A stretch of DNA of 62,974 nt, filler included, from Octopus bimaculoides (Eukaryota), in assembly GCF_001194135.2 (NCBI RefSeq). It is 7 parts of 7 records of this genome, joined end to end, with 100 filler letters (N's around TTAATTAATTAA, not from the genome) between each part and the next. Parts side by side here need not be neighbours in the genome. Positions count along the whole stretch, not along the records: positions 48,218 to 62,974 come from NC_069009.1; 6 more parts are not named here. One strand, 5' to 3'. The position numbers and the translations under genes are program-made. The notes under the pieces are model-generated. The model was not told the origin of the DNA. It saw only the letters and a list, made by a program, of their open reading frames with translations, and did no database searches. Positions 10,362-62,974 of this stretch are shown here, piece by piece; within the stretch, counting starts at the first letter, position 1, and the number at the start of each line of letters is the position of its first letter.

Positions 10362-12919
10362 ANNNNNNNNNNNNNNNNNNNNNNNNNNNNNNNNNNNNNN
10401 NNNNNNNNNNNNNNNNNNNNNNNNNNNNNNNNNNNNNNNNNNNNNNNNNNNNNNNNNNNNNNGATAATCCTAATGTTATATATATTCTATATACATGTAA
10501 AGAGGGAAAGAGCTAAGGAGTGAAAGAAAGAAAGAAAGAGAGAGAGGGAGAGAGGAAGTGAGATAAAGGGAGAAAAGATAAGAGAGATTGGTAGAAATAA
10601 GAGACAAATGAGATAGAAAGAAATCTTGGTGTTCTAACGTTGATTTTGTATATCCCATGCAAATGAGAACTGGATAATTTATACTTCCGTAGCTTGTGGA
10701 ATGGATTATCAGAAAGATTTAGAAGTGAGTGAAAATATGAGTGCAAATGAGGAGTAAAAATATGTGGAGAGAGTGGAAAGACTGAGAAGGGAAACCATTA
10801 ATAAATGAGAGGCACGAAAGTAGAGTGAGGAGATATAGGTGTAAGGTAATGAGGGTGGTAGAAAGAGCAAGACAGGGGTAATGAGAGAGCGAGAGAGAGA
10901 GGGAGAGGATAAAAGGAAACATGAGAGAGACAGAGAGAGGTTGAAAAGGAAAGAGAGAGACAGAGAAAAGGAAGGACAGAGAGAGATTGAATAGGAAGAA
11001 GAGAGGCAGAGCCATAATTTGCATAGAAATATGAAGAGATGATGGGTTCCTTTTGAAATGAAAGGCAGAGCATACAATGAAAAGGAATATACCTGTTGGT
11101 GGTTGCACGGTTACTTTTGTATTTGGTTTGTTAGACGGTTCTAGAAATTGGAGGAAAAAAGTTGTTGAAAAATATAATGGTTTTGCAACACCTCTCATGC
11201 ATTACGAATTTTGAAAAAGATACCTTGTAAGTTATTTAATTAACTCTCTTGATATCTTGAATAAAATTTATAATGAGACTTGAATTAAGTGTTTGTGAAC
11301 GTAAGGCAGAAAATTGGAGAGAATAGATATGTATGTATTAATGAGAGAGCAAAAGTGGAGGAGGAGAGTGTGAGAGAAGGCAGGTAGAATGAGTGAGAGA
11401 GAGTGAAGGACGATAGCATGTGAGAGATAGGGAGAAATGCTTGGAGTTGTTAGCAGTATGAATAGCTTTGGGAGATGTGGAAGCATTCAGATAAACTTTG
11501 CCAAATGAGAAACACATTTCAGTTGTCTCATTTTCAGATATTCTTACACCGCACTTGGTGTGCACTTTCTACAGGGGATAATGAAGTCGGTTTTTGCTCG
11601 ATTAATAAACATAGGTTTGTATATATTTAAANNNNNNNNNNNNNNNNNNNNNNNNNNNNNNNNNNNNNNNNNNNNNNNNNNNNNNNNNNNNNNNNNNNNN
11701 NNNNNNNNNNNNNNNNNNNNNNNNNNNNNNNNNNNNNNNNNNNNNNNNNNNNNNNNNNNNNNNNNNNNNNNNNNNNNNNNNNNNNNNNNNNNNNNNNNNN
11801 NCTGTTGATAATTTAATTCTCTCAATTTCTTTACACCTCTCTTGTCTCTATTGTAGCATTATGTTTTGTGAATGTTTGAAATTGCACATTGTATTTTCCT
11901 CAAGATCATATCCTTGTTCAGTGTCATATAGCTGCTCTAGTCTTTGGACACAATTATACAAAACGTATTATGAATATGTTTTATGATTTTAGCATGATAA
12001 AATTTTCAAAAATGTTCTTAAAACACTGCAGACTGTATGAGCATTGAACAGTTCTGTTAATATGCATTTCAGTCCTGTATTGTGTGATAAGTAAGTAATT
12101 GAGAAAGCATCAGATGGGCTAGATTTCATTTGAATTATACCTCTAGTCATACCTTTAATAGCGTTGAAGGTGGGACAAATATAAAATTCTGGTACCATAG
12201 CTACATAACTCAGGCATAGTAGTATGTGAGTTGACCTGAACAGCAGATGAATATATTGAAGATGTTGCTAGCCTCGCTGTAATACAGTAGCTTGCTTTGA
12301 TATAGTAGTCTTATTCTGAGCTATACAGTAGACTTGATCTCAGTTGCTGCCAGGCCTTGGTCAAAGACACATGTCTTCACTTCGACTCCTCACGTTATCT
12401 CCCATATATGTTATTCACATGTCTAGTCACCTCAAGACAATATATAATGGTTTGTAAAGAAAGATATTTCATCACACACACATACTCAAAATGATTTTTC
12501 TCATTATACACATGCATACATACTTTAATACAAATATTATATGTTACTTCTTTGAGAGCAAAAGCAAAAATCAAAATTTCCTATGTAAACATACGTTTTT
12601 GTATCATACCACATGCTTCCATCACCAAAGGTGAACACAGAAGAAAGTATATATTTATTCACAAAAATGTTTTATGGTGATTCATACTAACTGTTTTATC
12701 ATTTAATAATAATCACTTGAACACCCAACGACTGCAGCTATAAAATGGTGACCCTGACATAAAAAAAATATACATATATATACACATATACATATACATA
12801 TATATACATGCATGTATATGCATGTATATATATATATGCATAAACATATATATACAAACATACATATATGCATACATATATATATACATATATATATACA
12901 TACATATATATATATACAC

Positions 12920-51166: not shown

Positions 51167-54055
51167 ATGTCACCGATTCTTCTTCGGAGTCTCTGCTTAA
51201 TTTTTGTGATTTCCTCATTGACCAATCATATAACAGCTTCTACGATGACCCCATCGATTCCATCACACAGCGTCACAACTGCTGCTAGTGTTTCTGCTGC
51301 TGCTGCTTCTGCTGCTGTCGTTCCTTCTGATTCGTCACCGCGAACAATGGCGATGATAACAAGGACCCTGCAGCCTGACAAAGGGATTATTATGACTCGG
51401 CTTGCACCAACTGCTGAACTTCCGCCTCCTCAACAGACATCAACCGATTCCTTGCAGGGTTCAGGGTTGATCAACTCCAAGATGGATGACCTGACATTGT
51501 CGAAGCCAACGAAATGTTTGACAAACGTTAGCAGGCAGGGAACAATGCCAGGCAAGGTTTTCTCCCCTGAGGATAGCTTCAGTTCTCTGAGAGAAACAGA
51601 GAGAGATTTGGACGAAATGAACTCAAGTGCTATCCAAAGTGACAATAGTGATGCTTTGTCAAAAGAAAATACCTCCAGCTTTAAGAGACGAGCAACCAAA
51701 AATCATAGCAAAATGAATGCAAGTGTTTTCAAAGCAGACGAGAGTGACGTAACACCTCAAACACATAGACTTAGTTACAAGAGACAAACAGATAGAACCC
51801 CTGATAAAAATGACACGGGTTTGCTCCAACGAGACCATACTGATAATATATCACATACAAATAACTCCATTTTCGATGGACAAACAGACATACATCTTGA
51901 TAAGAACAGCACAGATGTTTCCCAAAGTGGACATACAAACATTACACCACAGGCAAATGATTCTGTTTACAAGAGACGAACAGACAGACATTTCAATAAA
52001 AATGACACAGTTGCTTTCCGAAGAGACTATACTGACAATATTCCAAATGCAAATGGCTCCATTTCCAAGAGAAAAACAGACAGACATCTCAACGGAAATG
52101 ATACAGATGTCTTCCAAAAAAATCATACTGGTGCTATATCACATGCAAATGGCTCTGCTTATGAGAGACAAACAGACAGACATTTCACTAAAAACGACAC
52201 ACGTGTTTTCCAAAGAAACCAAACTGACATTGCCCCACAAACAAATGTCTCTAATTACAAGACACAAACAGACAGACACTTCCATAAAAATGACACAAGC
52301 ATTTTCCAAACAGACCAAACTGATATTGCCCCACATACAAATGGCTCTGGTTACGAGAGACAAACTGATAGACACATTAATAAAAACAACACAGATAACT
52401 TCCAAAGAGAAAATACTAGCGTTATATTGCATGGAAACAGTTCTGACTATGAGGGACTAACAGACAGACATTTGAATAAAAACAACTCAGATATTTCCCA
52501 AAGAGACAAAAGTAACATTGTACTTCAGTCAAAGAACTTCGGTTATAAGTGGAAAGCAAACCAAAGCCTCAATATAAAGGACGTTAAAGTTTTCCTGGCA
52601 GATGACAGTAATGTAACTCCGAGAACAAATTCTTCAGGTTACAAGAGATGGCATGATGAGAGATCCAGTAAAATAAATGCTGTTATTTCTGATATGAATA
52701 CCTCCAAAAGTCTATCAGTAGCGAATTTTACAAGTTACAGGAAATGGATAACCAACAAAATCCTTGGTAGAGATAATACTGCTTTTTTTCCGAAGGCCAT
52801 ATCTAATAATAGAAACGCAACAAATGACTCCAGTGATGGTGGAAGGTTTAGCAAAGAAGATGTGGGTGTTTTCAAAACAGATCCCTTCAGAAGTTTGCCC
52901 TCAACTACGGTGAGAGATGGTGTAAACCCGACAAGTCCCCTTGAAAAGTTACCTTCAACAACAGAGAGAAGACGCTTATATCAGAACAACTCCCATAAAG
53001 ATTTTCCCTCTGCAACACAGAGAGAAAGTGTATACGAGACGAGCCCCCTTAAAGATATACCCTCAACAACAGAAAGAAGAAGTATACATCAAATAAATCT
53101 CCTTAAAGAGTTACCTTCAACAACAGAGAGAGGAGGCTCACATCCGACGGAATCCTACGATGGTTTGTCCTCAGCAGTAAAAATAAGTGATATGCATCAG
53201 TCAAACTCTCTTGAAGGTTTGCCAACCCCAGCAGAAGGAAGAAGAGAACATCAGACAAACGTTCTTCATGGTTTACCCATTACGGAGAGGGGAATTCAGC
53301 CATTAACGAAGAACGAGAGATCTTATTCGCATTCCAAACTTTCGAGAGAAGACGACACTTTTCGTGATAGCACACATGCGTATGATGCGCAGCAATTTCT
53401 GTCATTTAGACATGCTAATAGAACTTCCATTGGTGACCCTCCAGACGACATCAGTGAACGGAAAAGAGAAGGGGTAGGAATAGAAGGAGAGCAAGAAGAA
53501 GAAGACGAAGATGAAGACGAGTCGGGAGATGGAAGTGAAGGAGAATTTGGGCAAAAGAGTTTTATATACAATTCTAGCAACACTTCGATAGAGTCGGACA
53601 TAATTCAAAGCGATACAGGCGCTTGGACGACGAGGGACAAATTGGATGCTCCAAATGTGATCCGTCTGGGTTATTTGACTGGCTCCCAGACCAGAACAAT
53701 GAGAAGAGAGAACAGCAATATATACAGGCGTAGCATTAGCAGTGGTAGTAGTACCAGTAGTAGTAGTAGTAGTAGTAATAGTAAAAGACGTGGAGATGAA
53801 TATTATCGAAGGCCAGGCCAGGCAATTTCTGGAGCTCTGAGCCTAGCGGTGGCCGAGATCAATAGTAACCCATCAATACTTCCCGAACACCGACTGGAAT
53901 TCATACCACAGGAGACTTACGGTGAGGAATCGGAAAGCATTCGTAAAACGACGCTGCTGCTCGATGCCAACATTTCAGCTTACATTGGTCCCCAAGAGAC
54001 ATGCTTATATGAGGCCAGAATTGCCGCTGTCTTCAATGTACCGATGTTGTCCTAT
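51167..54055 (+). CDS. Gyc32E: Receptor guanylyl cyclase (Gyc32E-like), coding exon 1: signal peptide, ~800-aa repeat-rich extension, start of ANF-receptor domain (exon begins at acceptor 50991)
   Basis: MSPILLRSLCLIFVISSLTNHITAS signal-like start. IRLGYLTGSQ..RRPGQAISGALSLAVAEIN..ETYGEESESIR..SAYIGPQETCLYEARIAAVFNVPMLSY matches my recollection of the Gyc32E ectodomain. Donor GTGAGT at 54056, phase 0. Orthology is from memory, not a search. Confidence 0.88.
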
Positions 54056-54542
54056 GTGAGTATATGGTTTATTACACCGTTTTCTATTTTTGCACAAACC
54101 ATTTGCAAAATTGGTTATAGAACTAGATACTAATAGATTTAAATTGAGGAGTTTACGAAATTGCAGTTAGATTATTTATTTATGATGAAGCTCGCTCTTA
54201 AAAAGCGTTTTTTTTTCTTTTTGAAAAGCGTTAGCAATTATAAAAATTTTCAATTGCTATTTTTCGTGAGATATTTGAGAAGATATGTCAATCTGATGAA
54301 ATTTCATTATATTTAAACGGTGTTTTATTATTCTTGAAAAACTTGTTTTTATTAATGGAGTGGAAACAGCTGTAATTTATGAGATGTGTCATTTGTTTCT
54401 ATAAAATAATTAAATTGAATTTAATTTATCATTTAAAGATTAAATTATCAAATTATTTAATTGTTCAATTTATTGTTTTGGTTTCTATTTCTTATATATA
54501 TATCTATATATATATAATATTGTACATCTATATCTTTTCAAG

Positions 54543-54725
54543 TATTGCTCAGACTACACAGTCAGTGACAAACAGCGGTACCCAACCTTCATCCGGACCA
54601 AACCCACAGAGGCCCAAATCTCCCAGAGTGTCGCCTCTCTCTTATTGACCTTCCAGTGGACAAAGGTCACTTTTGTCTACTCAGATGAAATGGAGTTCCA
54701 GTTCACAGCTGAGGCTATTGTCAAG
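54543..54725 (+). CDS. Gyc32E: Receptor guanylyl cyclase coding exon 2
   Basis: ttttcaAG|YCSDYTVSDKQRYPTFIRTKPTEAQISQSVASLLLTFQWTKVTFVYSDEMEFQFTAEAIVK|GTtagt; 183 nt, phase 0-0. Missed by the ORF track. Confidence 0.92.
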
Positions 54726-55251
54726 GTTAGTAACTAACACCATTTTCTGAATTCCTAGTTTTGGCTGTGTGGTTCTAGGTTCGATCCCACTGTGCAACAA
54801 ATTGGGTAATTTTTGTTTTTGCTTTTAGAATTTGATGAGGGCGGGATTGGTTAGTCATAGGAAGAAGGGCAGTGTTTGTTTGACTTTTTTTAAGGGCTTT
54901 TTTGGAAAGAGGTGGAAGGAGAAAGAAATTTACTCTACGCATAAGCATATAATATTATATCATATTACACATGCATGCGCACACACATATACATACATGC
55001 ATACACACACACACTCATATACACATACATTCATATATCATATATCGAGGCTATCTTTACTATTTTGTACTATTTTGGCCATTCGTTATGTAACTAAAGT
55101 TAGGTTGAGTAAAATTCAATATCCTTTCTTGCGTCACGTAATTATTATATATATATATATATGGGAGAATTCACGAAAAGACAACAGACGAAGACAGGTG
55201 GTGTAAACAACAAATGGACGTATTAGTATAACACTCGGGAATAGAGAAAGT

Positions 55252-55287
55252 CTTTAACGTTTCGAGCCTATGCTCTTCAATAGAAAG
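55252..55287 (-). ncRNA. Hammerhead remnant with mutated core (same family as 29727 and 32088), in cyclase intron 2
   Basis: TTT-CTATTGA-A-GAGC-ATAG-GCTC-GAAAC-GTT-AAAG; the CUGANGA core is broken. Confidence 0.6.
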
Positions 55288-55347
55288 GAACACAGAAAGA
55301 AACAAGGAGAGAAAAAAATATGTGCAGTGGTCAGCGATCTATCATGG

Positions 55348-55389
<42 letters not shown>

Positions 55390-55647
55390 NNNNNNNNNNN
55401 NNNNNNNNNNNNNNNNNNNNNNNNNNNNNNNNNNNNNNNNNNNNNNNNNNNNNNNNNNNNNNNNNNNNNNNNNNNNNNNNNNNNNNNNNNNNNNNNNNNN
55501 NNNNNNNNNNNNNNNNNNNNNNNNNNNNNNNNNNNNNNCAATTAAATAAGTACCAGTTACGCATTGGGGTCGATATAATCGACTTAATCCCTTTGTCTGT
55601 CCTTGTTTGTCCCTTCTATGTTTAGCCCCTTGTGGGCAATAAAGAAT

Positions 55648-55686
<39 letters not shown>

Positions 55687-55731
55687 TCACACACACACAC
55701 ACTCTCTCTTTTTCTTGTTCTGTGTTTGCAG

Positions 55732-55852
55732 CTGCTCGAAGCTAACAATATAGCGGTGACCCAGCAGGAGATGTATGACGGCCCCTACTTCCACAATCAC
55801 GTGGAGAACCCTTTTGCAGACATTGTCTCGCGGACCTACGTGGACACACGGA
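55732..55852 (+). CDS. Gyc32E: Receptor guanylyl cyclase coding exon 3
   Basis: tttgcAG|LLEANNIAVTQQEMYDGPYFHNHVENPFADIVSRTYVDTR-A|GTaagt; 121 nt, phase 0-1. Confidence 0.92.
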
Positions 55853-56522
55853 GTAAGTCCATCATCATTGCTACCGTCATCATTGTCATCACCACCACCC
55901 TCCGCCACCTCCTCCTCCTCCTCATCATCACAACCACCACCATCATCACTATCATCATCATCACTATCATCATCATCACTATCATCATCATCACCATATC
56001 ATTGTTACCATTTTCGTCATTGTCACCACCACAATCAACAATACTTTCACTACTACCACCATCACCGNNNNNNNNNNNNNNNNNNNNNNNNNNNNNNNNN
56101 NNNNNNNNNNNNNNNNNNNNNNNNNNNNNNNNNNNNNNNNNNNNNNNNNNNNNNNNNNNNNNNNNNNNNNNNNNNNNNNNNNNNNNNNNNNNNNNNNNNN
56201 NNNNNNNNNNNNNNNNNNNNNNNNNNNNNNNNNNNNNNNNNNNNNNNNNNNNNNNNNNNNNNNNNNNNNNNNNNNNNNNNNNNNNNNNNNNNNNNNNNNN
56301 NNNNNNNNNNNNNNNNNNNNNNNNNNNNNNNNNNNNNNNNNNNNNNNNNNNNNNNNNNNNNNNNNNNNNNNNNNNNNNNNNNNNNNNNNNNNNNNNNNNN
56401 NNNNNNNNNNNNNNNNNNNNNNNNNNNNNNNNNNNNNNNNNNNNNNNNNNNNNNNNNNNTACTTCCACCATCACCACCACCACCACCACCACCACCACTA
56501 CTACTACCACCACCACTACCAT

Positions 56523-56553
<31 letters not shown>

Positions 56554-56585
56554 TCCACCATCACCACCACCAGCAACAACAACAT

Positions 56586-56616
<31 letters not shown>

Positions 56617-56650
56617 GCTGCTGTTGTTACTGCTACTGTTACCATTTCAG

Positions 56651-56797
56651 TCTATGTGATGCTGGGCCAGTCGTACGACTTTGTTGGCCTGATGTCGAAC
56701 CTGTACGAGAGAGGATTGCTGGACAGTGGAGAGTATTTCGTTGTTGGCGTCTATTTGGATTATTATGATTACAGCAACCCAGCCAAGTACCTTGCGG
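56651..56797 (+). CDS. Gyc32E: Receptor guanylyl cyclase coding exon 4
   Basis: tttcAG|(I)YVMLGQSYDFVGLMSNLYERGLLDSGEYFVVGVYLDYYDYSNPAKYLA-G|GTaagt; 147 nt, phase 1-1. Confidence 0.92.
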
Positions 56798-57713
56798 GTA
56801 AGTATATGGTACCTCCCCACTGGCGTAGGTAGGGGGGAGGCGCTAGGGGTGGCACCTTTAAAGGGGCACCACTTTTGGGTCTGCTGTAGGCAATATGTGT
56901 CCTTTTGTGGGGTACGGGGGTGGCAAATGTAAGGGGCGGCACATGCTCTAGCTACGCTAGTGTGCCTCCCCGCCTGCTGTACCTTGTGATGTATGTATCT
57001 ATGTGAGTCTGTGTGTGTGTGTATGGGATTGCTTACTATATTATTTGTATCCGTGCTGTTTATATAGATAGATTTTTTCGTTTGTTTACTTATTTTTCTC
57101 TATTTCTTATATTTCATCGTAAGTATGTGCATGTTTGTCTTTTGTGCGTGTATTATACCGTTTGTATCTGTGCCTGTTTTTTTCTGTCTTTTGTCATCGT
57201 GTTGCATTGTGTGGTGGTGGGTGTTATTATTCTATTTGTGTTTTCTGTTGAAGCTCAGTCTGTCTATATTCCTATGTGCGTGGCATCCGTGATTTGTCTA
57301 AGCGTCGTATCTGTTCTATGCATTAATAATGCACTGAGAGACATGACACTTAGACACACATACACATACATACATACACATATACACACACATCCAAACA
57401 CATACACACACATATACACACACATAGAAACACATACACAAACACATACACACACACACATACACACACATACACACACGTACACACACATACACAAACA
57501 GACACACATACACACACATACATGCACATATACGCACACATATACATAGACACATGCACACATACAAACATACAAACACACATATACACACACAGCTGCA
57601 CACCTACCCATGCACCCCTACAACCAGTTACCCACCTCTTCCCGCTACCCACCTCTTCCCGCTACCCTCTGTATTCTTCATATTTTACTGTTTTACTGGG
57701 TTTTTTTTCTCAG

Positions 57714-57895
57714 GTACGTTTGTGTTCCAAAACCTTGATCTTATCGCCGTGGCATTCAAATATTACATAGGGGTGATCCACTCGAGCCCTATGTACCCTG
57801 AATATACCCAGTTCACTGAGCAAGTGAACCGCTACCTTCAGCTGCCGCCTTTCAACCACCACAACCCCTACGATGCGATCAATATAAATAAGATC
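57714..57895 (+). CDS. Gyc32E: Receptor guanylyl cyclase coding exon 5
   Basis: ttttctcAG|(G)TFVFQNLDLIAVAFKYYIGVIHSSPMYPEYTQFTEQVNRYLQLPPFNHHNPYDAININKI|GTaagt; 182 nt, phase 1-0. Confidence 0.9.
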
Positions 57896-58331
57896 GTAAG
57901 TATTCAATCATATCACCACTGCCATCATTGTTTGACATCATCATGAACATCATCATCATCACTACCACCACCACCACCACCAATACCACCGCCATCATCA
58001 TCATCATCATTGTCATCGTCGTCGTCATTGTCGTCATCATGATCAAAATCATCATCATCATCATCATTATCATCAGCCTCACCACCACCAGCATCATCAT
58101 CACCATCATCATTCTCATCCCTATGCTACTGGTAAAAATATTTGTTGATCACGCATGTGCCTTGTTTTAATAGTACACTGTTATATTAGGGAAAGTCTCA
58201 GTACTTACTATAGTGACAACACTACCTATCTGTCTACCTTTCACATACATACACATTCTCTCGACAACAACTACTCACACTATAGTGAAAGCCTTTTTTA
58301 AAAGTCTGTGTTGCATTTTCTCTTTGCTGAA

Positions 58332-58366
<35 letters not shown>

Positions 58367-58498
58367 CACGCACACACACATATGCAAACAAACAACTCAA
58401 AATAATAACTATATTGCTAAATAGTGAAAGTGTTTTTTCTTGAAGTCTGTTTTCACTTTCACACATTGCCATTTTGTTTTTCCTTTTCCGGTCTGCAG

Positions 58499-58634
58499 TT
58501 ACGACCCGAAGCAGCATACCTGTACGATGCAGTGAAACTGTATGCAGACGCAGCCCACCTGGCCTGGAAGGAGGGTCAAGCGGTGGACAACGGGCAGGAG
58601 ATCTTCAACAGGATTCAGAAAAGGACATTCAAAA
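58499..58634 (+). CDS. Gyc32E: Receptor guanylyl cyclase coding exon 6
   Basis: ctgcAG|LRPEAAYLYDAVKLYADAAHLAWKEGQAVDNGQEIFNRIQKRTFK-A|GTaaga; 136 nt; AYLYDAV is the ANF-receptor motif. Confidence 0.93.
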
Positions 58635-58639
58635 GTAAG

Positions 58640-59086
58640 ACCCCACCACCACTCTTTTGCCAAGCCGCTAAGTTACAGGGATGTAAACACACCAGTATCG
58701 ATTATCAAACGATGTTGGGGGGACAAACACAGACACACAAACACACATATATATATATACATATACATATATACGACGGGCTTCTTTCAGTTTCCGTCTA
58801 CCAAATCCACTCACAAGGCTTTGGTCAGCCCGAGGCTATAGCAGAAGACACTTGCACAAGGTGCTATGCAGTGGGACTGAACCCAGAACTATGTGGTTCG
58901 TAAGCAAGCTACTTACCACACAGCCACCCCTGGGCTTCTTTCAGTTTCCGTCTACCAAATCCACTCACAAGGCTTTGGTCAGCCCGAGGCTATAGCAGAA
59001 GACACTTGCACAAGGTGCTATGCAGTGGGACTGAACCCAGAACTATGTGGTTCGTAAGCAAGCTACTTACCACACAGCCACCCCTG
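58640..59086 (-). mobile_element. tRNA-derived SINE with exact 154-bp tandem duplication of its head half
   Basis: gggcttctttcag..cagccacccctg at 58778-58932 and 58932-59086. Confidence 0.8.
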
Positions 59087-59162
59087 TGCCTGATGTAACT
59101 ACTTTATATAAATCCCAACATCTCCATCGTATTTCCATATTTGTATCTCATTCATTTCACAG

Positions 59163-59311
59163 GTGCCAGTGGCCTATTCTTTCGTATAAACTCTGATGGT
59201 GATGTAGAAGGTAACTTTTCACTGGTGGCAAGGCGTTACACGAAAAGCAAGGGCTGGGGATTGTATCCTGTCGGGGTTTTCCTGCTAAGTGAAAATCTCA
59301 CGGGCCATCCG
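59163..59311 (+). CDS. Gyc32E: Receptor guanylyl cyclase coding exon 7
   Basis: tttcacAG|(S)ASGLFFRINSDGDVEGNFSLVARRYTKSKGWGLYPVGVFLLSENLTGHP|GTaagt; 149 nt, phase 1-0. Confidence 0.93.
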
Positions 59312-59605
59312 GTAAGTAAGCAAATCCTTTCTCAACTGACACCCATCTCTCATTTTTGCTTGGTATGCATTTGCACTATTTCTAATCAGCTGATTTATTG
59401 ATTAAAGGAGGAAAATGGGTATGACCGTTCTGAGGAGCAGGTAACAAGCCATGAAACAGTCTTTCAGGGCACTCCCTGCCTCTTAGTATTTACATTTTTG
59501 CTTAATCCACAGAAAAACTTTATTTTTGCATTTATTTCAGTTCTTCTGATTTACTGTGATGTGTAAGTATGTGTGTGTGTTTGTGTGGGTGGGTGTGGGT
59601 ATATG

Positions 59606-59646
<41 letters not shown>

Positions 59647-60124
59647 GAGATATTAATATTTCTAAGTTTCTCTAAAGGAGACTATGGCAGCGGTACTGGA
59701 AATTAATAAATTATCGCCAAGCCAACATGGCAGTTCCAAATATAGGACGAATGCTGCCGCGGATTAGCTACAAGAAGCCATCGCCTCTAGCTAGCTATGT
59801 GACACACGAATCTGTGTCCATTATAACCTTCGAACAGGGGAGGTCAGCAGCTTCCCCAGGTGAAACAAGTAAAAGAGTAAAAAAGAGTATATATATACTC
59901 TTTTTTACGTGCCAGTTATGAAACACTGGCATCGGCCATGACTACAATATGTGTGTGTTTACATACATACATAAAAAACTACCCTGCTGTTGATATTGAA
60001 ATTCCAATGAAGAAGCCATGGGTCTAGGTTAGAAACCAGCTCTTTCTCTATTGGCAAGAAATCTAGAAGTAAAATTGAATAATGGCATACATACATTCAT
60101 ATAGATATAGATATAGGTATACAG

Positions 60125-60285
60125 AATGGGCTTCTTTCAGTTTCCATCTACCAAATCCACTCACAAGGCTTTGGTCAGTCCAAGGCTATAATAGAAGACA
60201 TTTGCCCAAGGTGCCATGCAGTGGAATTGAACCCAGAACCATGTAGTTTGGGAGCAAGCTTTGTGCTACACTGCCATTCCTGCAC
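60125..60285 (-). mobile_element. tRNA-derived SINE head half
   Basis: atgggcttctttcagtttccatctaccaaatccactcacaaggc..gtggaattgaacccag. Confidence 0.75.
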
Positions 60286-60372
60286 ATACTGGATCAGAAT
60301 AGACCTGGGGTTAAACAGTAACAACAACAAAACTACATCTACTAAACTCTCATTCTCTCTCTCTCTCCATAG

Positions 60373-60481
60373 ACATTCCACCTGTATGAGGGCGAGAAAA
60401 TAATGTGGCCTGATGGGAAGGCACCTCCCCTTGATGAACCCCCATGTGGGTACAGAGGGGAGCGCTGTATCCCCCCCAAAA
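60373..60481 (+). CDS. Gyc32E: Receptor guanylyl cyclase coding exon 8 (juxtamembrane Cys region)
   Basis: ctccatAG|TFHLYEGEKIMWPDGKAPPLDEPPCGYRGERCIPPK-A|GTgagt; W..G..PPxDxPxCGxxGExC hallmark. Missed by the ORF track. Confidence 0.95.
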
Positions 60482-61354
60482 GTGAGTACCTTCAAAATAT
60501 TTCATAAAACATACTTTTGCATTTGTTTGTCCCCCTGCCGGGGTACATGTGTATAGGCAGACAAACTTCTTAACCTCATAGCTATTGCAGCTAATAATTA
60601 ATAATTGATAAATAATTAATATAAATGCATTAATTATTCATAGGCCAATAGACCATTAATTATTCATAGGACTATTTCCACAGTGGAAGGTTTTCTTATG
60701 TTCAAGTATACATAAATCTGTTAAATATGAATTCAAGGATAATTTTGACCCCCAAATAATATTTATGTGAGTTTTTGAATAGCTAAATATGTTTCCCACA
60801 TTGTAATTGCTTTAGCTTCGATGCTTGGTCTGAAATGAATTCACTTGTCAAGCAAGTACACCTCTGAATTAATAATATTTATTGTGAGCGAAACAGTTGT
60901 TGGGTACAATTAAATTAAGAACTGTATATGAATTTTATGCTTTTCTTCTTTTTATTCTAAAGTAGAGACCCATAAATTATGGTTTAATTCCCCTTTCTTC
61001 CTCCATTACTAGTGTAAGCGGTTCTGAAATAGCGAGGGAAGTTGCTGCCCTAACACATCAGTCTTAAGCATGAATGAAGAGACAGCAACAGAGATGCATC
61101 CCACAAAAAATTACCCTTCTTCCAATATTCCTTTCTGCTCTAGTCACAAGGCCCGAAATTTATGGGGAGTGGTGGGGGGGCCAGTACGCAACTGTTACTT
61201 AATTTATTGACCCTGAAAGGATAAAAGGCAAAGTCGACTGCGGAGGAATTTGAACTCAGAACGTAACAGCAGACAAAATACCTCTAAGCATTTTGCCCGG
61301 CGTGCTAACGATTCTGCCAGCTCACTGCCTCCCTTCTTCAAATGTTATAAGATG

Positions 61355-62310
61355 TAGCTTGAAGAGGATAAACTACCCCTATTTTGCAGAAAAAAGTGTA
61401 GGCGGCCAGCCATGAGTCTCATAGCTGGCCACCAACATTTTTTTCTGCAAAATAGGGGCAGCTTATCCTGTTCAGTCTATATTATTAGCATTATCCTGCG
61501 ATTGAGAATTTAAAAATCACTTCTTTAACTTTCTAAAACATCTCAACGCTTCTAAAAGCAAACTTCGTTTGTTTATTTACGTTTGTCGTAATTTGAATTT
61601 AACATATGAGAGCGTCTCATAAAGCGAGATTTCTGTACATCTTAAATTTGCAGAGGAATTTGTAGTGGGTAGTTTAGCTCAATCGGTCAGAGCATCGTGA
61701 CGCGTAATCACAGGGATGTGAGTTCGAGTCTACAGCTAGCCACCTACACTTTTTTCTGCAAAATAGGGGTAGTTTATCCTGTTCAGGCTATATTATTAGC
61801 ATTATTCTGCGATTGAGAATTTAAAATCACTTCTTTAACTTTCTAAGACATCTCAACGCTTCTAAAAGCAAATTTGGNNNNNNNNNNNNNNNNNNNNNNN
61901 NNNNNNNNNNNNNNNNNNNNNNNNNNNNNNNNNNNNNNNNNNNNNNNNNNNNNNNNNNNNNNNNNNNNNNNNNNNNNNNNNNNNNNNNNNNNNNNNNNNN
62001 NNNNNNNNNNNNNNNNNNNNNNNNNNNNNNNNNNNNNNNNNNNNNNNNNNNNNNNNNNNNNNNNNNNNNNNNNNNNNNNNNNNNNNNNNNNNNNNNNNNN
62101 NNNNNNNNNNNNNNNNNNNNNNNNNNNNNNNNNNNNTACAGCTAGCCACCTACACTTTTTTCTGCAAAATAGGGGTAGTTTATCCTGTTCAGGCTATATT
62201 ATTAGCATTATTCTGCGATTGAGAATTTAAAATCACTTCTTTAACTTTCTAAGACATCTCAACGCTTCTAAAAGCAAATTTGGTTTGTTTACGTTCATCG
62301 TAATTTGAAT
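61355..62310. repeat. ~311-bp tandem unit containing a tRNA-like sequence, preceded by an inverted copy
   Basis: ctgcaaaatagggg..gcgattgagaatttaaaa.. at 61445, 61756 and 62162; inverted arm 61355-61410 pairs with 61424-61480. Confidence 0.8.
61668..61742 (+). tRNA. tRNA-like pseudogene or SINE head (loop CGCGTAA, nominal CGT/Thr), followed by a T6 tract
   Basis: Box A TAGCTCAATCGG, D stem GCTC/GAGC, anticodon stem GTGA/TCAC, box B GTTCGAGTC, T6 at 61750-61755. U33 is missing and the acceptor and T stems are imperfect. Confidence 0.5.
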
Positions 62311-62362
62311 TTATTATAAGATGTATTTCTATATGGCCACATGATCTGTTTGTTTTTCACAG

Positions 62363-62441
62363 ATTACATCAGAGAGATTATAGGTGGCGTTGTTGGTGGT
62401 ATTGCTGTGGTCATTATTGTCTTCCTGGTTGTAATCTACAG
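62363..62441 (+). CDS. Gyc32E: Receptor guanylyl cyclase coding exon 9 (transmembrane helix)
   Basis: tttcacAG|(N)YIREIIGGVVGGIAVVIIVFLVVIY-AG|GTgagt; 79 nt, phase 1-2. Confidence 0.93.
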
Positions 62442-62728
62442 GTGAGTTATCCATTCGTTATACCTTGATGTAGTGGCTTTCATTCATTTGTGTTTGTATA
62501 TATAAATTAATAGATGGTTATAATTATATATATGTATATATATATATGCATTTATAACTTTGTATGTGTGGGTGTGTACATATAGAAATGTATATGAATG
62601 ATGAATATCTTGGCCACCAATGCTACCATGCCCACCACTTCCTACTTTTGAATCTAAATCCCTCCTTTATGGCCCCTTTTCCTTACCTTCTTTCTCTCTC
62701 TCTCTCTTTCTCTTTCTCTCATTGACAG

Positions 62729-62837
62729 GAACTGGAAGTATGAGCAGGACCTTGCCAGCCTCTTGTGGAAGATTGACTACAAGGAGATCACGTTTCGCGA
62801 GCCCCTGGGGACCACTCCCACACAGAATTACACAAGG
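62729..62837 (+). CDS. Gyc32E: Receptor guanylyl cyclase coding exon 10 (cytoplasmic juxtamembrane); gene continues past the window
   Basis: ttgacAG|(R)NWKYEQDLASLLWKIDYKEITFREPLGTTPTQNYTR|GTaggt; YRxWxYEQxLxSLLWKID motif of invertebrate receptor GCs. Confidence 0.93.
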
Positions 62838-62974
62838 GTAGGTGGTAGAATCTATACATATATATATAGATTCAAGGTGAATATGGTATTTAAGTTTAGG
62901 CACCAGAATTAAGTATGGTTCAAAATAAGCAACAAGGATATCCAAAGTTAATGACTAGAATTAATTACTAGCCT

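What the first reader, a model, noticed from the sequence alone, without database searches (positions are those of the whole stretch)
51167..53653. Gyc32E-like receptor guanylyl cyclase with an ~800-aa repeat-built N-terminal extension in a single 3-kb exon
Seen: a stop-free frame runs from a signal peptide (51167) through about 805 aa of S/T-rich, repeat and acidic sequence before the ANF domain starts at residue about 830, then splices in frame through nine more exons. Established: receptor GCs normally place the ANF ligand-binding domain right after the signal peptide. Inference: a lineage-specific, heavily glycosylated module distal to the ligand-binding domain. It might act as a shield, adhesion or mechanosensory element, or a cleavable pro-region (many dibasic sites: FKRR, YKRR, SKRK, ERRR, ERKR). 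An intact 2.9-kb ORF in such a mutation-littered region implies selection.
Basis: partly seen in the sequence, partly recalled or inferred. Interest (0 to 1): 0.8.

Follow-up and report, generated by a model that had tools for sequence, protein, structure and literature searches.

The report
Octopus guanylyl cyclase receptor with glycan-brush leader
An octopus cell-surface receptor that makes the messenger cGMP carries an unusual 800-residue repeat-built, probably sugar-coated tail in front of its ligand-binding domain; cuttlefish have a shorter, unrelated-looking version, so it is a real but modest cephalopod peculiarity.

Summary
Window 51167-54055 is one stop-free coding exon (963 codons). 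It encodes a signal peptide, about 805 residues of low-complexity sequence, then the start of an ANF_receptor domain ("LGYLTGSQ" at residue 834). Nine further canonical exons complete the ANF domain, the transmembrane helix and the start of the kinase-homology domain before the piece ends. The orthologous O. vulgaris locus continues into kinase-homology and cyclase exons.

The extension holds 12 tandem 32-residue units, 8 tandem 18-residue units and an acidic run. It has 36 N-glycosylation sequons against 13.6±3.2 in shuffles, and 1 Cys against 12-16 expected.

Against O. vulgaris, all 8 indels preserve the frame. dN/dS is 0.52 (CI 0.39-0.72), against 0.03 for the adjacent ANF part. So the extension is translated and weakly constrained.

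It is not octopus-only. Cuttlefish and another decapodiform-like taxon have a signal peptide plus a 340-385-residue Ser/Thr-rich leader in the same exon, with no sequence similarity to the octopus one. Named annelid, priapulid and arthropod relatives have the canonical layout.

My best reading is a disordered, heavily glycosylated brush at the membrane-distal tip of a Gyc32E-type orphan receptor. The cleavable pro-region idea is poorly supported. This is a new variant of a known kind, of moderate interest.

The parts
51167..51241 (+). Start codon and signal peptide (res 1-25, MSPILLRSLCLIFVISSLTNHITAS)
   Evidence: First in-frame ATG shared with O. vulgaris. 24 of 26 residues are identical and dS is 0. 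The hydrophobic core was judged by eye.
51242..51598 (+). Ser/Thr/Ala/Pro-rich non-repeat segment (res 26-144); holds the extension's only Cys (C117)
   Evidence: dN/dS against O. vulgaris is 0.64.
51599..52750 (+). Array of 12 tandem 32-residue (96-bp) units, consensus DRHFNKNDTxxFQRxxTDIxPxxNGSxYxRQT, each with 2-3 N-x-S/T sequons (res 145-528)
   Evidence: TRF gives period 96. The 32-residue register is exact. O. vulgaris has one more unit, a 96-nt indel.
52751..52894 (+). Linker between the two repeat arrays (res 529-576)
52895..53326 (+). About 8 degenerate tandem 18-residue units (LPSTTERRxxxxxxxxxx), res 577-720
   Evidence: Register printed. The units are too diverged for TRF.
53327..53590 (+). 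Non-repeat segment containing the acidic Glu/Asp run (res 721-808; acidic run about res 764-795, 53456-53551)
   Evidence: dN/dS is 0.43.
53591..53656 (+). Motif just before the ANF domain, conserved between octopus and cuttlefish (res 809-830, ESDIIQSDTGAWTTRDKLDAPN)
   Evidence: Homology to the cuttlefish proteins starts at 809-811. Not seen in non-cephalopod relatives.
53657..54055 (+). First part of the ANF_receptor domain (res 831-963), with an octopus-specific poly-Ser insert at res 842-882 (53690-53812); donor GTGAGT follows 54055
   Evidence: Pfam PF01094. dN/dS is 0.03 for res 886-963. Donor.
54543..54725 (+). Exon 2 (ANF domain; YCSDYTVSDKQRYPTF...)
   Evidence: Canonical AG/GT, phase 0. 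Within the ANF_receptor match.
55732..55852 (+). Exon 3 (ANF domain)
   Evidence: 100% identical to O. vulgaris P0001. Splice sites.
56651..56797 (+). Exon 4 (ANF domain)
   Evidence: 98% identical to P0001..
57771..57895 (+). Exon 5 (ANF domain)
   Evidence: Missing from the O. vulgaris gene model but present in its DNA.
58499..58634 (+). Exon 6 (ANF domain)
   Evidence: 93% nucleotide identity to L001.
59163..59311 (+). Exon 7 (end of the ANF domain)
60373..60481 (+). Exon 8 (juxtamembrane region, TFHLYEGEKIMWPDGKAPPLDEPPCGYRGERC)
   Evidence: Matches the juxtamembrane motif of homologues and of NPR-A. The acceptor was corrected.
62363..62441 (+). Exon 9 (transmembrane helix, model res 1292-1312)
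62729..62837 (+). Exon 10 (start of the kinase-homology region, NWKYEQDLASLLWKIDYKEI); the gene continues beyond the edge of the piece

Best explanation
Window 51167-54055 is the first coding exon of the octopus orthologue of Gyc32E, a protostome orphan receptor guanylyl cyclase.

Shown:
- The exon encodes, in one frame, a signal peptide, an extension of about 805 residues, and then the canonical ANF ligand-binding domain. Transmembrane, kinase-homology and cyclase parts follow.
- The extension is low in complexity, almost free of Cys and dense in N-glycosylation sequons.
- It was built largely by tandem amplification of a 96-bp unit (12 copies) and a 54-bp unit (about 8 copies).
- It evolves about ten times faster at non-synonymous sites than the ANF domain, but always in frame and with dN/dS below 1.
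- A non-homologous Ser/Thr-rich leader of 340-385 residues occupies the same position in cuttlefish-like cephalopods.

Inferred:
- The extension is translated and stays on the mature receptor as an intrinsically disordered, heavily N-glycosylated (in cuttlefish mucin-like, O-glycosylated) polymer brush. It is attached to the membrane-distal N-terminus of the ligand-binding domain.
- Selection acts on its presence, length, hydrophilicity, lack of free cysteines and glycan sites rather than on its exact sequence.
- Its likely effect is steric and hydrodynamic. It would shield or gate access to the binding cleft, space receptors apart, project above the glycocalyx, and protect the ectodomain from proteases.
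- A leader arose before the octopus-cuttlefish split, and in the octopus lineage it was remodelled and doubled in length by repeat expansion.
For: The coding frame is real.
- 0 stops in 830 codons, against 25-80 in the other five frames, in two species.
- All 8 nucleotide indels against O. vulgaris are multiples of 3 (3, 3, 3, 6, 6, 9, 21, 96). Only 1 of 9 indels in flanking non-coding DNA is.
- The signal peptide is conserved, and the frame upstream of it is not.

The extension is constrained, weakly.
- dN/dS is 0.52 (bootstrap 95% interval 0.39-0.72) at dS 0.15. Residues 886-963 of the ANF domain give 0.03.
- Decapodiform comparisons give 0.43-0.88 for the leader and 0.03-0.08 for the ANF part.
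- There is 1 Cys against 12-16 expected from base composition, and 0 against 2-6 in the decapodiform leaders.

Glycosylation is plausible.
- 36 sequons against 13.6±3.2 in shuffles; 0 of 5000 shuffles reach 36. 29 of the 36 are conserved in O. vulgaris.
- The sequon columns are among the most conserved in the repeat units.

The rest of the protein is a receptor GC.
- ANF_receptor covers model positions 4-348 of 353 at E 5e-46.
- The best solved relatives are ANP receptor 1 structures, aligned through the transmembrane helix.
- Kinase-homology and cyclase exons lie downstream in the syntenic O. vulgaris locus.

No known fold was found in the extension.
- Pfam and PDB searches found nothing.
- None of the 150 best of 373 hits in 1.84 billion representatives touches residues 1-808.
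- AF2 gave pLDDT 30-41 and no stable secondary structure for three repeat units.

The leader is shared with decapodiforms.
Against: - No transcript, protein or glycan data were available. Inclusion of the whole exon in the mRNA, and glycosylation itself, are inferences.
- ORF integrity would be maintained by selection on the downstream receptor anyway.
- A dN/dS near 0.5 is what many tolerated disordered linkers show. The closest sepiid pair gives 0.88.
- Sequon enrichment is partly inherited through duplication of one unit, so the 36 sites are not independent events. The 29 of 36 conserved between species is not clearly above what 84% residue identity predicts.
- Both AF2 runs used very shallow alignments and also failed on the (truncated) ANF part, so they do not prove disorder. 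The exon-wide run drew weak beta-strands in the repeats.
- No expression site is known, so the proposed steric role is generic.
Confidence: 0.6

Rival explanations
1. Tolerated near-neutral spacer. The extension is translated but has no function of its own. It is a slippage-prone low-complexity tract that grew by tandem duplication. It stays open only because any stop or frameshift would destroy the essential receptor encoded downstream in the same exon.
For: - Nucleotide identity of the extension (91.6%) is similar to that of the flanking introns (80-93%).
- There is no similarity between the octopus and cuttlefish leaders.
- Repeat copy number differs between two Octopus species.
- dN/dS is 0.88 in the closest sepiid pair.
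- No domain was detected.
Against: - dN/dS is significantly below 1 in octopus (CI 0.39-0.72) and is 0.43-0.45 in the deep decapodiform comparison.
- Cys is strongly depleted.
- Sequon columns are the most conserved in units that are otherwise 40% identical.
- A leader of at least 340 residues is kept in both the octopus and the cuttlefish lineage, although in-frame deletions could have removed it.
Confidence: 0.2
2. Cleavable pro-region or polyprotein. Proprotein convertases cut at the dibasic sites, which removes the extension to unmask the ANF domain or releases repeated peptides.
For: About 20 dibasic positions are present (FKRR, YKRR, SKRK, ERRR, ERKR). Several sit at a fixed position (29-31) of the 32-residue unit.
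Against: - There is no R-x-K/R-R furin-type site anywhere in residues 1-1290.
- Column 29-31 of the unit is variable (K 0.40, R 0.55, Q 0.40), so only a minority of units carry a dibasic pair.
- The cuttlefish leaders are Thr/Ser-rich with very few basic pairs.
- The peptides between the sites are not better conserved than the sites themselves.
Confidence: 0.07
3. Folded repeat domain. The 32-residue units form a beta-rich solenoid or beads-on-a-string binding module for adhesion, a lectin or a ligand, rather than a disordered brush.
For: - Aromatic or aliphatic residues recur regularly (F4, F12, I19-20, Y28) and Pro sits at column 21.
- AF2 on the whole exon drew beta-strands through residues 238-435, with slightly higher pLDDT (33-41) than elsewhere.
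Against: - pLDDT never reaches 50. The three-unit run gave pTM 0.09 and no secondary structure.
- Hydrophobic content is 21% against 31% expected.
- Units are only about 40% identical to each other.
- There is no Pfam or PDB relative.
- The cuttlefish equivalent is plainly mucin-like, with poly-Thr and 36% Ser+Thr.
Confidence: 0.08
4. Not part of the mature protein. The real transcript starts elsewhere or removes most of 51242-53590 as an intron, and the open frame is incidental.
For: - No transcript data could be consulted.
- The O. vulgaris gene model is fragmentary and starts at Met27.
- A possible acceptor (ttccttacag) lies at about 50990.
Against: - The only signal peptide is at 51167. 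No Met followed by a hydrophobic stretch lies near the ANF start.
- Frame-preserving indels, dN/dS below 1 and Cys depletion are not expected of an intron or UTR.
- The same layout in one exon is seen in five independent cephalopod sequences.
- The O. vulgaris annotation includes the extension in its coding sequence.
Confidence: 0.05

Closest known systems
Drosophila Gyc32E and the protostome Gyc32E clade of orphan membrane guanylyl cyclases (clade described in PMC12611267)
   Same: - The ANF domain is 40-48% identical to proteins named guanylate cyclase 32E(-like).
- It shares the N-terminal signature LGYLTGSQ...RPGxxISGAxSLAV, the juxtamembrane PPxDEPxCG motif, a single transmembrane helix, the WKI(D/N)Y start of the kinase-homology domain, and (in the O. 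vulgaris orthologue) the cyclase exons.
   Different: In the other named members the LGYLTGSQ motif lies about 20-55 residues from the N-terminus, directly after the signal peptide. Here it is at residue 834. There is also a 40-residue poly-Ser insert in the first loop of the ANF domain.
Vertebrate natriuretic peptide receptor A (NPR1; PDB 9bcv, 1dp4)
   Same: It is the closest solved structure. It shares the domain order ANF domain, juxtamembrane Cys motif, transmembrane helix, kinase-homology domain.
   Different: By sequence it is a different clade (E 1e-18 only). From my own knowledge, not tested here: NPR-A has no leader, and its mature N-terminus is the first strand of the ligand-binding domain.
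Cuttlefish-type orthologues (Acanthosepion esculentum reads, L002-L005; L006; P0198/L007)
   Same: - One exon holds the signal peptide, a Cys-free Ser/Thr-rich leader, the conserved motif (I/V)xSxTGxWTTxxKLxAxxVIRLGYLTGSQ and the ANF start.
- The leader evolves fast (dN/dS 0.43-0.88) and the ANF part slowly.
   Different: - The leader is 340-385 residues, not 805.
- It is 36% Ser+Thr with poly-Thr runs, which is mucin-like.
- It has no 32- or 18-residue repeat arrays, and its N-sequons are not significantly enriched.
- It shows no detectable similarity to the octopus leader.
N-terminal mucin-like regions of cell-surface receptors, such as the variable O-glycosylated N-terminus of CD45 (analogy from my own knowledge, not tested here)
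   Same: A disordered, glycan-rich, fast-evolving, length-variable segment sits at the membrane-distal end of a signalling receptor's ectodomain. This is a works-like comparison only.
   Different: The protein family is unrelated. In octopus the chemistry looks N-linked (N-x-S/T) rather than classic Pro/Thr/Ser O-linked mucin. There is no evidence of alternative splicing.

Membership tests
Receptor (membrane) guanylyl cyclase | N-terminal signal peptide | tested here: met
   MSPILLRSLCLIFVISSLTNHITAS at the first conserved ATG, conserved in O. vulgaris. Judged by eye; no signal-peptide predictor was available.
Receptor (membrane) guanylyl cyclase | Extracellular ANF_receptor (periplasmic-binding-protein-like) domain | tested here: met
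   PF01094 at E 5.1e-46, profile positions 4-348 of 353, on the spliced model. NPR-A is the best PDB match.
Receptor (membrane) guanylyl cyclase | Single transmembrane helix after the juxtamembrane Cys motif | tested here: met
   PPLDEPPCGYRGERC followed by IIGGVVGGIAVVIIVFLVVIY (res 1292-1312). This stretch aligns to the NPR-A transmembrane region.
Receptor (membrane) guanylyl cyclase | Intracellular kinase-homology domain | tested here: inconclusive
   Only its first roughly 35 residues lie inside the piece (exon 10). The full domain is present in the syntenic O. vulgaris locus: P0001 carries PF07714/PF00069, and tblastn finds exons at L001 25800-40433.
Receptor (membrane) guanylyl cyclase | C-terminal class III cyclase catalytic domain (PF00211) | not testable with these tools
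   It lies beyond the edge of the piece. In the O. vulgaris orthologous locus, cyclase exons follow on the same strand (L001 42125-46965; the neighbouring gene model carries PF00211).
Gyc32E clade | Closer to Gyc32E-type than to Gyc76C-type or other receptor GCs | tested here: met
   Named best hits are guanylate cyclase 32E(-like) at 40-48% identity. Gyc76C-like proteins, including an octopus paralogue (P0019), are at 29-32%. No phylogenetic tree was built.
Gyc32E clade | ANF domain immediately after the signal peptide (canonical layout) | tested here: not met
   LGYLTGSQ is at residue 834, against about 20-55 in named relatives. This is the departure that makes it a variant.
Mucin-domain (Pro/Thr/Ser-rich, O-glycosylated) proteins | Pro/Thr/Ser-rich tandem repeats, typically more than 25-40% Ser+Thr | tested here: inconclusive
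   The octopus extension has 22% Ser+Thr and 4.6% Pro, with tandem repeats. The cuttlefish leader has 36% Ser+Thr and 6.7% Pro, without clear repeats. Octopus looks more N-glycan-rich than classically mucin-like.
Mucin-domain (Pro/Thr/Ser-rich, O-glycosylated) proteins | Dense glycosylation demonstrated | not testable with these tools
   This needs glycoproteomics or glycosidase shift assays.
Proprotein-convertase-processed pro-regions | Conserved R-x-K/R-R or conserved dibasic cleavage sites flanking conserved products | tested here: not met
   There is no R-x-[KR]-R in residues 1-1290. Dibasic pairs occur in a minority of units, at variable columns.

The most novel reading that the evidence does not exclude
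Coleoid cephalopods turned an orphan Gyc32E-type receptor into a new kind of sensor. In this reading the hypervariable glycan brush is itself the sensing element. It would bind lectins, microbes or matrix, or transmit shear or contact force to the ANF dimer. Extracellular glycan or mechanical interactions would then be coupled directly to cGMP synthesis, perhaps in chemotactile or epithelial tissue.
Probability: 0.08. Interest if true: 0.75.

Novelty: new variant of a known kind. Interest (0 to 1): 0.4.

Why it matters
As far as I know and could find, receptor guanylyl cyclases have an invariant ectodomain plan: signal peptide, then the ligand-binding domain. Two full-text searches of the held paper library turned up no description of a receptor GC with a long glycosylated N-terminal leader.

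A leader of 340-805 residues kept in both octopus and cuttlefish lineages shows that the membrane-distal tip of this receptor class can carry a large disordered module. It also gives a natural test case for how such a brush affects ligand access, dimer geometry and cGMP output in an orphan receptor clade.

It is a clean example of a protein segment conserved in presence and composition but not in sequence, and of rapid repeat-driven remodelling (one whole unit differs between two Octopus species).

Practically, the public O. vulgaris gene model is fragmentary. It has no signal peptide and no transmembrane helix, and the cyclase part is split off as a separate model. The ten-exon structure given here could be used to correct it.

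Tried and rejected
- The first two word-index protein searches were swamped by poly-Ser and poly-Glu words. They returned few, mostly short, proteins, so their negative results about the extension are weak.
I searched exon 1 alone instead.
- That search did not return the O. vulgaris orthologue's cluster at all. Octopod sequences therefore seem to be absent from that library, and 'no hit to the extension' says nothing about other octopods.
- AF2 on exon 1 with a two-row alignment was uninformative: pLDDT 29.7, and poor even over the ANF part.
- An alignment of overlapping four-unit windows collapsed onto the identical stretches and was useless for structure prediction.
- A three-unit, four-row run gave pLDDT 40.9 and no secondary structure.
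- The exact-sequence look-up of the window's own ORF found nothing, so the source species is not identified. About 15% synonymous divergence from O. vulgaris, together with full synteny, points to another Octopus species.
- I tried to find exon 1 in a gastropod through the Pomacea model, but the protein was not on record.
- I tried to name the organisms behind the unnamed relatives from assembly and run accessions. This worked only for ERR12945500, which is A. esculentum.
- tRNA and Rfam scans of the piece found nothing.
- An RGD motif at residues 875-877 is not conserved in O. vulgaris (SGD there), so I dropped it.
Full report
WHAT IS THERE

The piece (48218-62974) is octopus genomic DNA. It is colinear with a stretch of Octopus vulgaris chromosome OX597842.1, fetched as L001. 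Introns are 80-93% identical and exons 93-100%. Synonymous divergence is about 0.15, so the window comes from another Octopus species. The species could not be identified.

The only long ORF is 50975-54133 on the + strand. Its first ATG that is conserved and in frame in both species is at 51167. A signal-peptide-like sequence follows it. Upstream of it the two species differ in frame, so that stretch is untranslated. The coding exon ends at 54055 with TAT|GTGAGT.

Nine more exons follow, each with a pyrimidine tract, AG and GTRAGT (54543-54725, 55732-55852, 56651-56797, 57771-57895, 58499-58634, 59163-59311, 60373-60481, 62363-62441, 62729-62837). They join in frame into a 1349-residue partial protein without a stop.

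On this spliced model Pfam ANF_receptor matches at E 5e-46 over profile positions 4-348 of 353. The best solved relatives are ANP receptor 1 structures. Their alignment runs through the juxtamembrane Cys motif, the transmembrane helix (res 1292-1312) and the start of the kinase-homology domain.

The piece ends there. In the O. vulgaris locus, kinase-homology exons (L001 25800-40433) and cyclase exons (42125-46965) follow on the same strand.

ANATOMY OF THE EXTENSION

| Residues | Content |
|---|---|
| 1-25 | signal peptide |
| 26-144 | Ser/Thr/Ala/Pro-rich segment |
| 145-528 | 12 tandem 32-residue units in an exact register; TRF sees the central 7.6 copies of the 96-bp unit |
| 529-576 | linker |
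| 577-720 | about 8 degenerate 18-residue units (LPSTTERR...) |
| 721-808 | non-repeat sequence with a Glu/Asp run |
| 809-830 | short motif also conserved in cuttlefish |
| 831 onward | VIRLGYLTGSQ, the conserved start of the ANF domain in all Gyc32E-type proteins |

The extension has 36 N-x-S/T sequons. Composition-preserving shuffles give 13.6±3.2, and none of 5000 reaches 36. The whole ANF-to-membrane region has 3.

Within the 32-residue units, which are only about 40% identical to each other, the best-conserved columns are D1, K6, N7, S/T9, F12, S/T17, N24, S/T26 and Y28. The two sequons N7-x-T9 and N24-x-S26 are thus among the most conserved features.

There is 1 Cys against 12-16 expected from base composition. 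Hydrophobic residues make up 21% against 31% expected.

Pfam, the PDB sequence search and an exhaustive phmmer scan of 1.84 billion representatives found nothing that matches residues 1-808. Two AlphaFold runs with very shallow alignments stayed below pLDDT 50 throughout. This is compatible with disorder but is not proof of it.

IS IT TRANSLATED AND CONSTRAINED?

Frame 1 has no stop in 830 codons in either species. The other five frames have 25-80 stops each.

All 8 nucleotide indels between the two octopuses in the extension are multiples of three, including one whole 96-nt unit. Only 1 of 9 indels in flanking non-coding DNA is.

Nei-Gojobori dN/dS values:

| Comparison | Extension / leader | ANF part |
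|---|---|---|
| window vs O. vulgaris | 0.52 (bootstrap 95% 0.39-0.72), dS 0.15 | 0.03 (res 886-963), same dS |
| decapodiform pairs | 0.43-0.88 | 0.03-0.08 |

A stop or frameshift here would also remove the receptor encoded downstream. The reduced dN/dS, the Cys depletion and the conserved sequon columns do show weak selection on the extension itself, at the level of composition.

DISTRIBUTION

The only protein in the 5.8-billion-sequence index that shares the extension is the O. vulgaris model 'guanylate cyclase 32E-like' (P0001). It is 80% identical over the extension and 99-100% over the ANF exons.

The two best hits in the exhaustive search are genomic ORF fragments from Logan assemblies (P0034, P0035). 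One of their runs, ERR12945500, is short-read data of the golden cuttlefish Acanthosepion esculentum according to bioRxiv 10.1101/2025.04.22.649952.

Reading their frames upstream shows the layout: a signal peptide (MRHVRTLWLLAVFWSVVIHFLLLGTANP), a 341-residue Cys-free leader with 36% Ser+Thr and poly-Thr runs, the shared motif before the ANF domain, and the ANF start. All of this lies in one exon.

A third, much more diverged sequence has the same plan with a leader of about 385 residues. It is P0198, from ENA assembly ERZ21867824, with dS 0.8-1.8 against the sepiids.

BLASTP finds no similarity between octopus and cuttlefish leaders upstream of residue 811.

By contrast, named relatives from an annelid (Owenia), a priapulid, spiders, a scorpion and Drosophila put LGYLTGSQ within about 20-55 residues of the N-terminus. 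Unnamed genomic ORF fragments put it within about 135.

No full-length N-terminus from a non-cephalopod mollusc could be obtained. The origin of the leader is therefore bracketed only as 'before the octopus-cuttlefish split'.

HOW IT MOST LIKELY WORKS

Shown: the extension is part of the coding sequence between the signal peptide and the ligand-binding domain. It is hydrophilic, Cys-free, sequon-dense, repeat-built and fast-evolving, but it keeps its frame.

Inferred: it remains on the mature receptor as a disordered, heavily glycosylated brush on the membrane-distal N-terminus of the ANF domain. About 36 N-glycans would add tens of kDa.

Its effect would be steric and hydrodynamic. It would shield the binding cleft, space receptors apart, reach through the glycocalyx, or protect against proteases. 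Selection would act on presence, length and glycan sites rather than on sequence. I give this 0.6.

Rivals:
- A tolerated near-neutral spacer (0.2). It is favoured by intron-like nucleotide divergence, and disfavoured by dN/dS below 1, Cys depletion and long-term retention.
- A convertase-cleaved pro-region (0.07). There is no R-x-K/R-R site, and the dibasic pairs are variable and absent from the cuttlefish leaders.
- A folded binding repeat (0.08). The support is regular aromatic spacing and weak beta-strand predictions only.
- Exclusion from the mature transcript (0.05). No other signal peptide exists, and the evolutionary signatures are those of coding sequence.

COMPARISON AND NOVELTY

By sequence the protein belongs with the protostome orphan Gyc32E clade. 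That clade is described in PMC12611267. Identity to Gyc32E-like proteins is 40-48%, against 29-32% to Gyc76C-like proteins.

It meets every testable defining feature of a receptor guanylyl cyclase. It departs from the canonical layout in one respect, the position of the ANF domain.

Two full-text searches of the held library found no description of a receptor GC with such a leader. The sequence is already public inside a fragmentary automatic gene model.

I rate it a new variant of a known kind, with interest 0.4. It is a real, cleanly documented architectural oddity shared by octopus and cuttlefish lineages. Long disordered glycosylated leaders are common in surface proteins generally, and its function is unknown.

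Noticed in passing
window 53690-53812 (model res 842-882): A second octopus-specific low-complexity insert (TRTMRRENSNIYRRSISSGSSTSSSSSSSNSKRRGDEYY) lies inside the first loop of the ANF domain, between LGYLTGSQ and RPGQAISGA. Cuttlefish have 16 residues there and other taxa about 10. Its length differs by 4 Ser between the two Octopus species. An RGD in it is not conserved (SGD in O. vulgaris).
   Followed up: partly
L001 (O. vulgaris OX597842.1) 9923-49287: The public O. vulgaris model (P0001, 'guanylate cyclase 32E-like') is fragmentary.
- It starts at Met27, so the signal peptide is lost.
- It omits the exons homologous to window exons 2, 5, 6, 8, 9 (the transmembrane helix) and 10.
- The cyclase domain is called as a separate 269-aa gene.
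All omitted exons are present in the DNA.
   Followed up: partly
window 58652-59090, 60086-60290, 55541-55650, 61181-61330: Intronic copies of interspersed repeats. One is present as two tandem copies at 58652-59090. They have tens of 80-94% identical copies on both strands within the 50-kb O. vulgaris locus. No tRNA or Rfam match was found.
   Followed up: no
window 55390-55538, 56068-56459, 61878-62136: Three assembly gaps (runs of N) lie in introns. They are flanked by microsatellites and by (ACC/ATC)n-like low-complexity DNA, which gives long spurious poly-Thr/Ile ORFs. No exon appears to be lost, because the spliced ANF domain is complete.
   Followed up: partly
window 52175-52270 region / L001 about 11000-11100: The two Octopus species differ by exactly one 32-residue unit (a 96-nt indel). 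The array is therefore still changing copy number.
   Followed up: partly
window 50975-51166 and L001 9764-9922: O. vulgaris has an in-frame upstream ATG (MSSQQW...), 53 codons before the signal-peptide Met. In the window it is out of frame. A possible 5'-UTR intron acceptor (ttccttacag) lies at about 50990 in both species.
   Followed up: partly
(representative library): The exhaustive search did not return the cluster of the O. vulgaris orthologue, which should score about 1600 bits. Octopod orthologues therefore seem to be missing from that library, and its negative results do not cover them.
   Followed up: no
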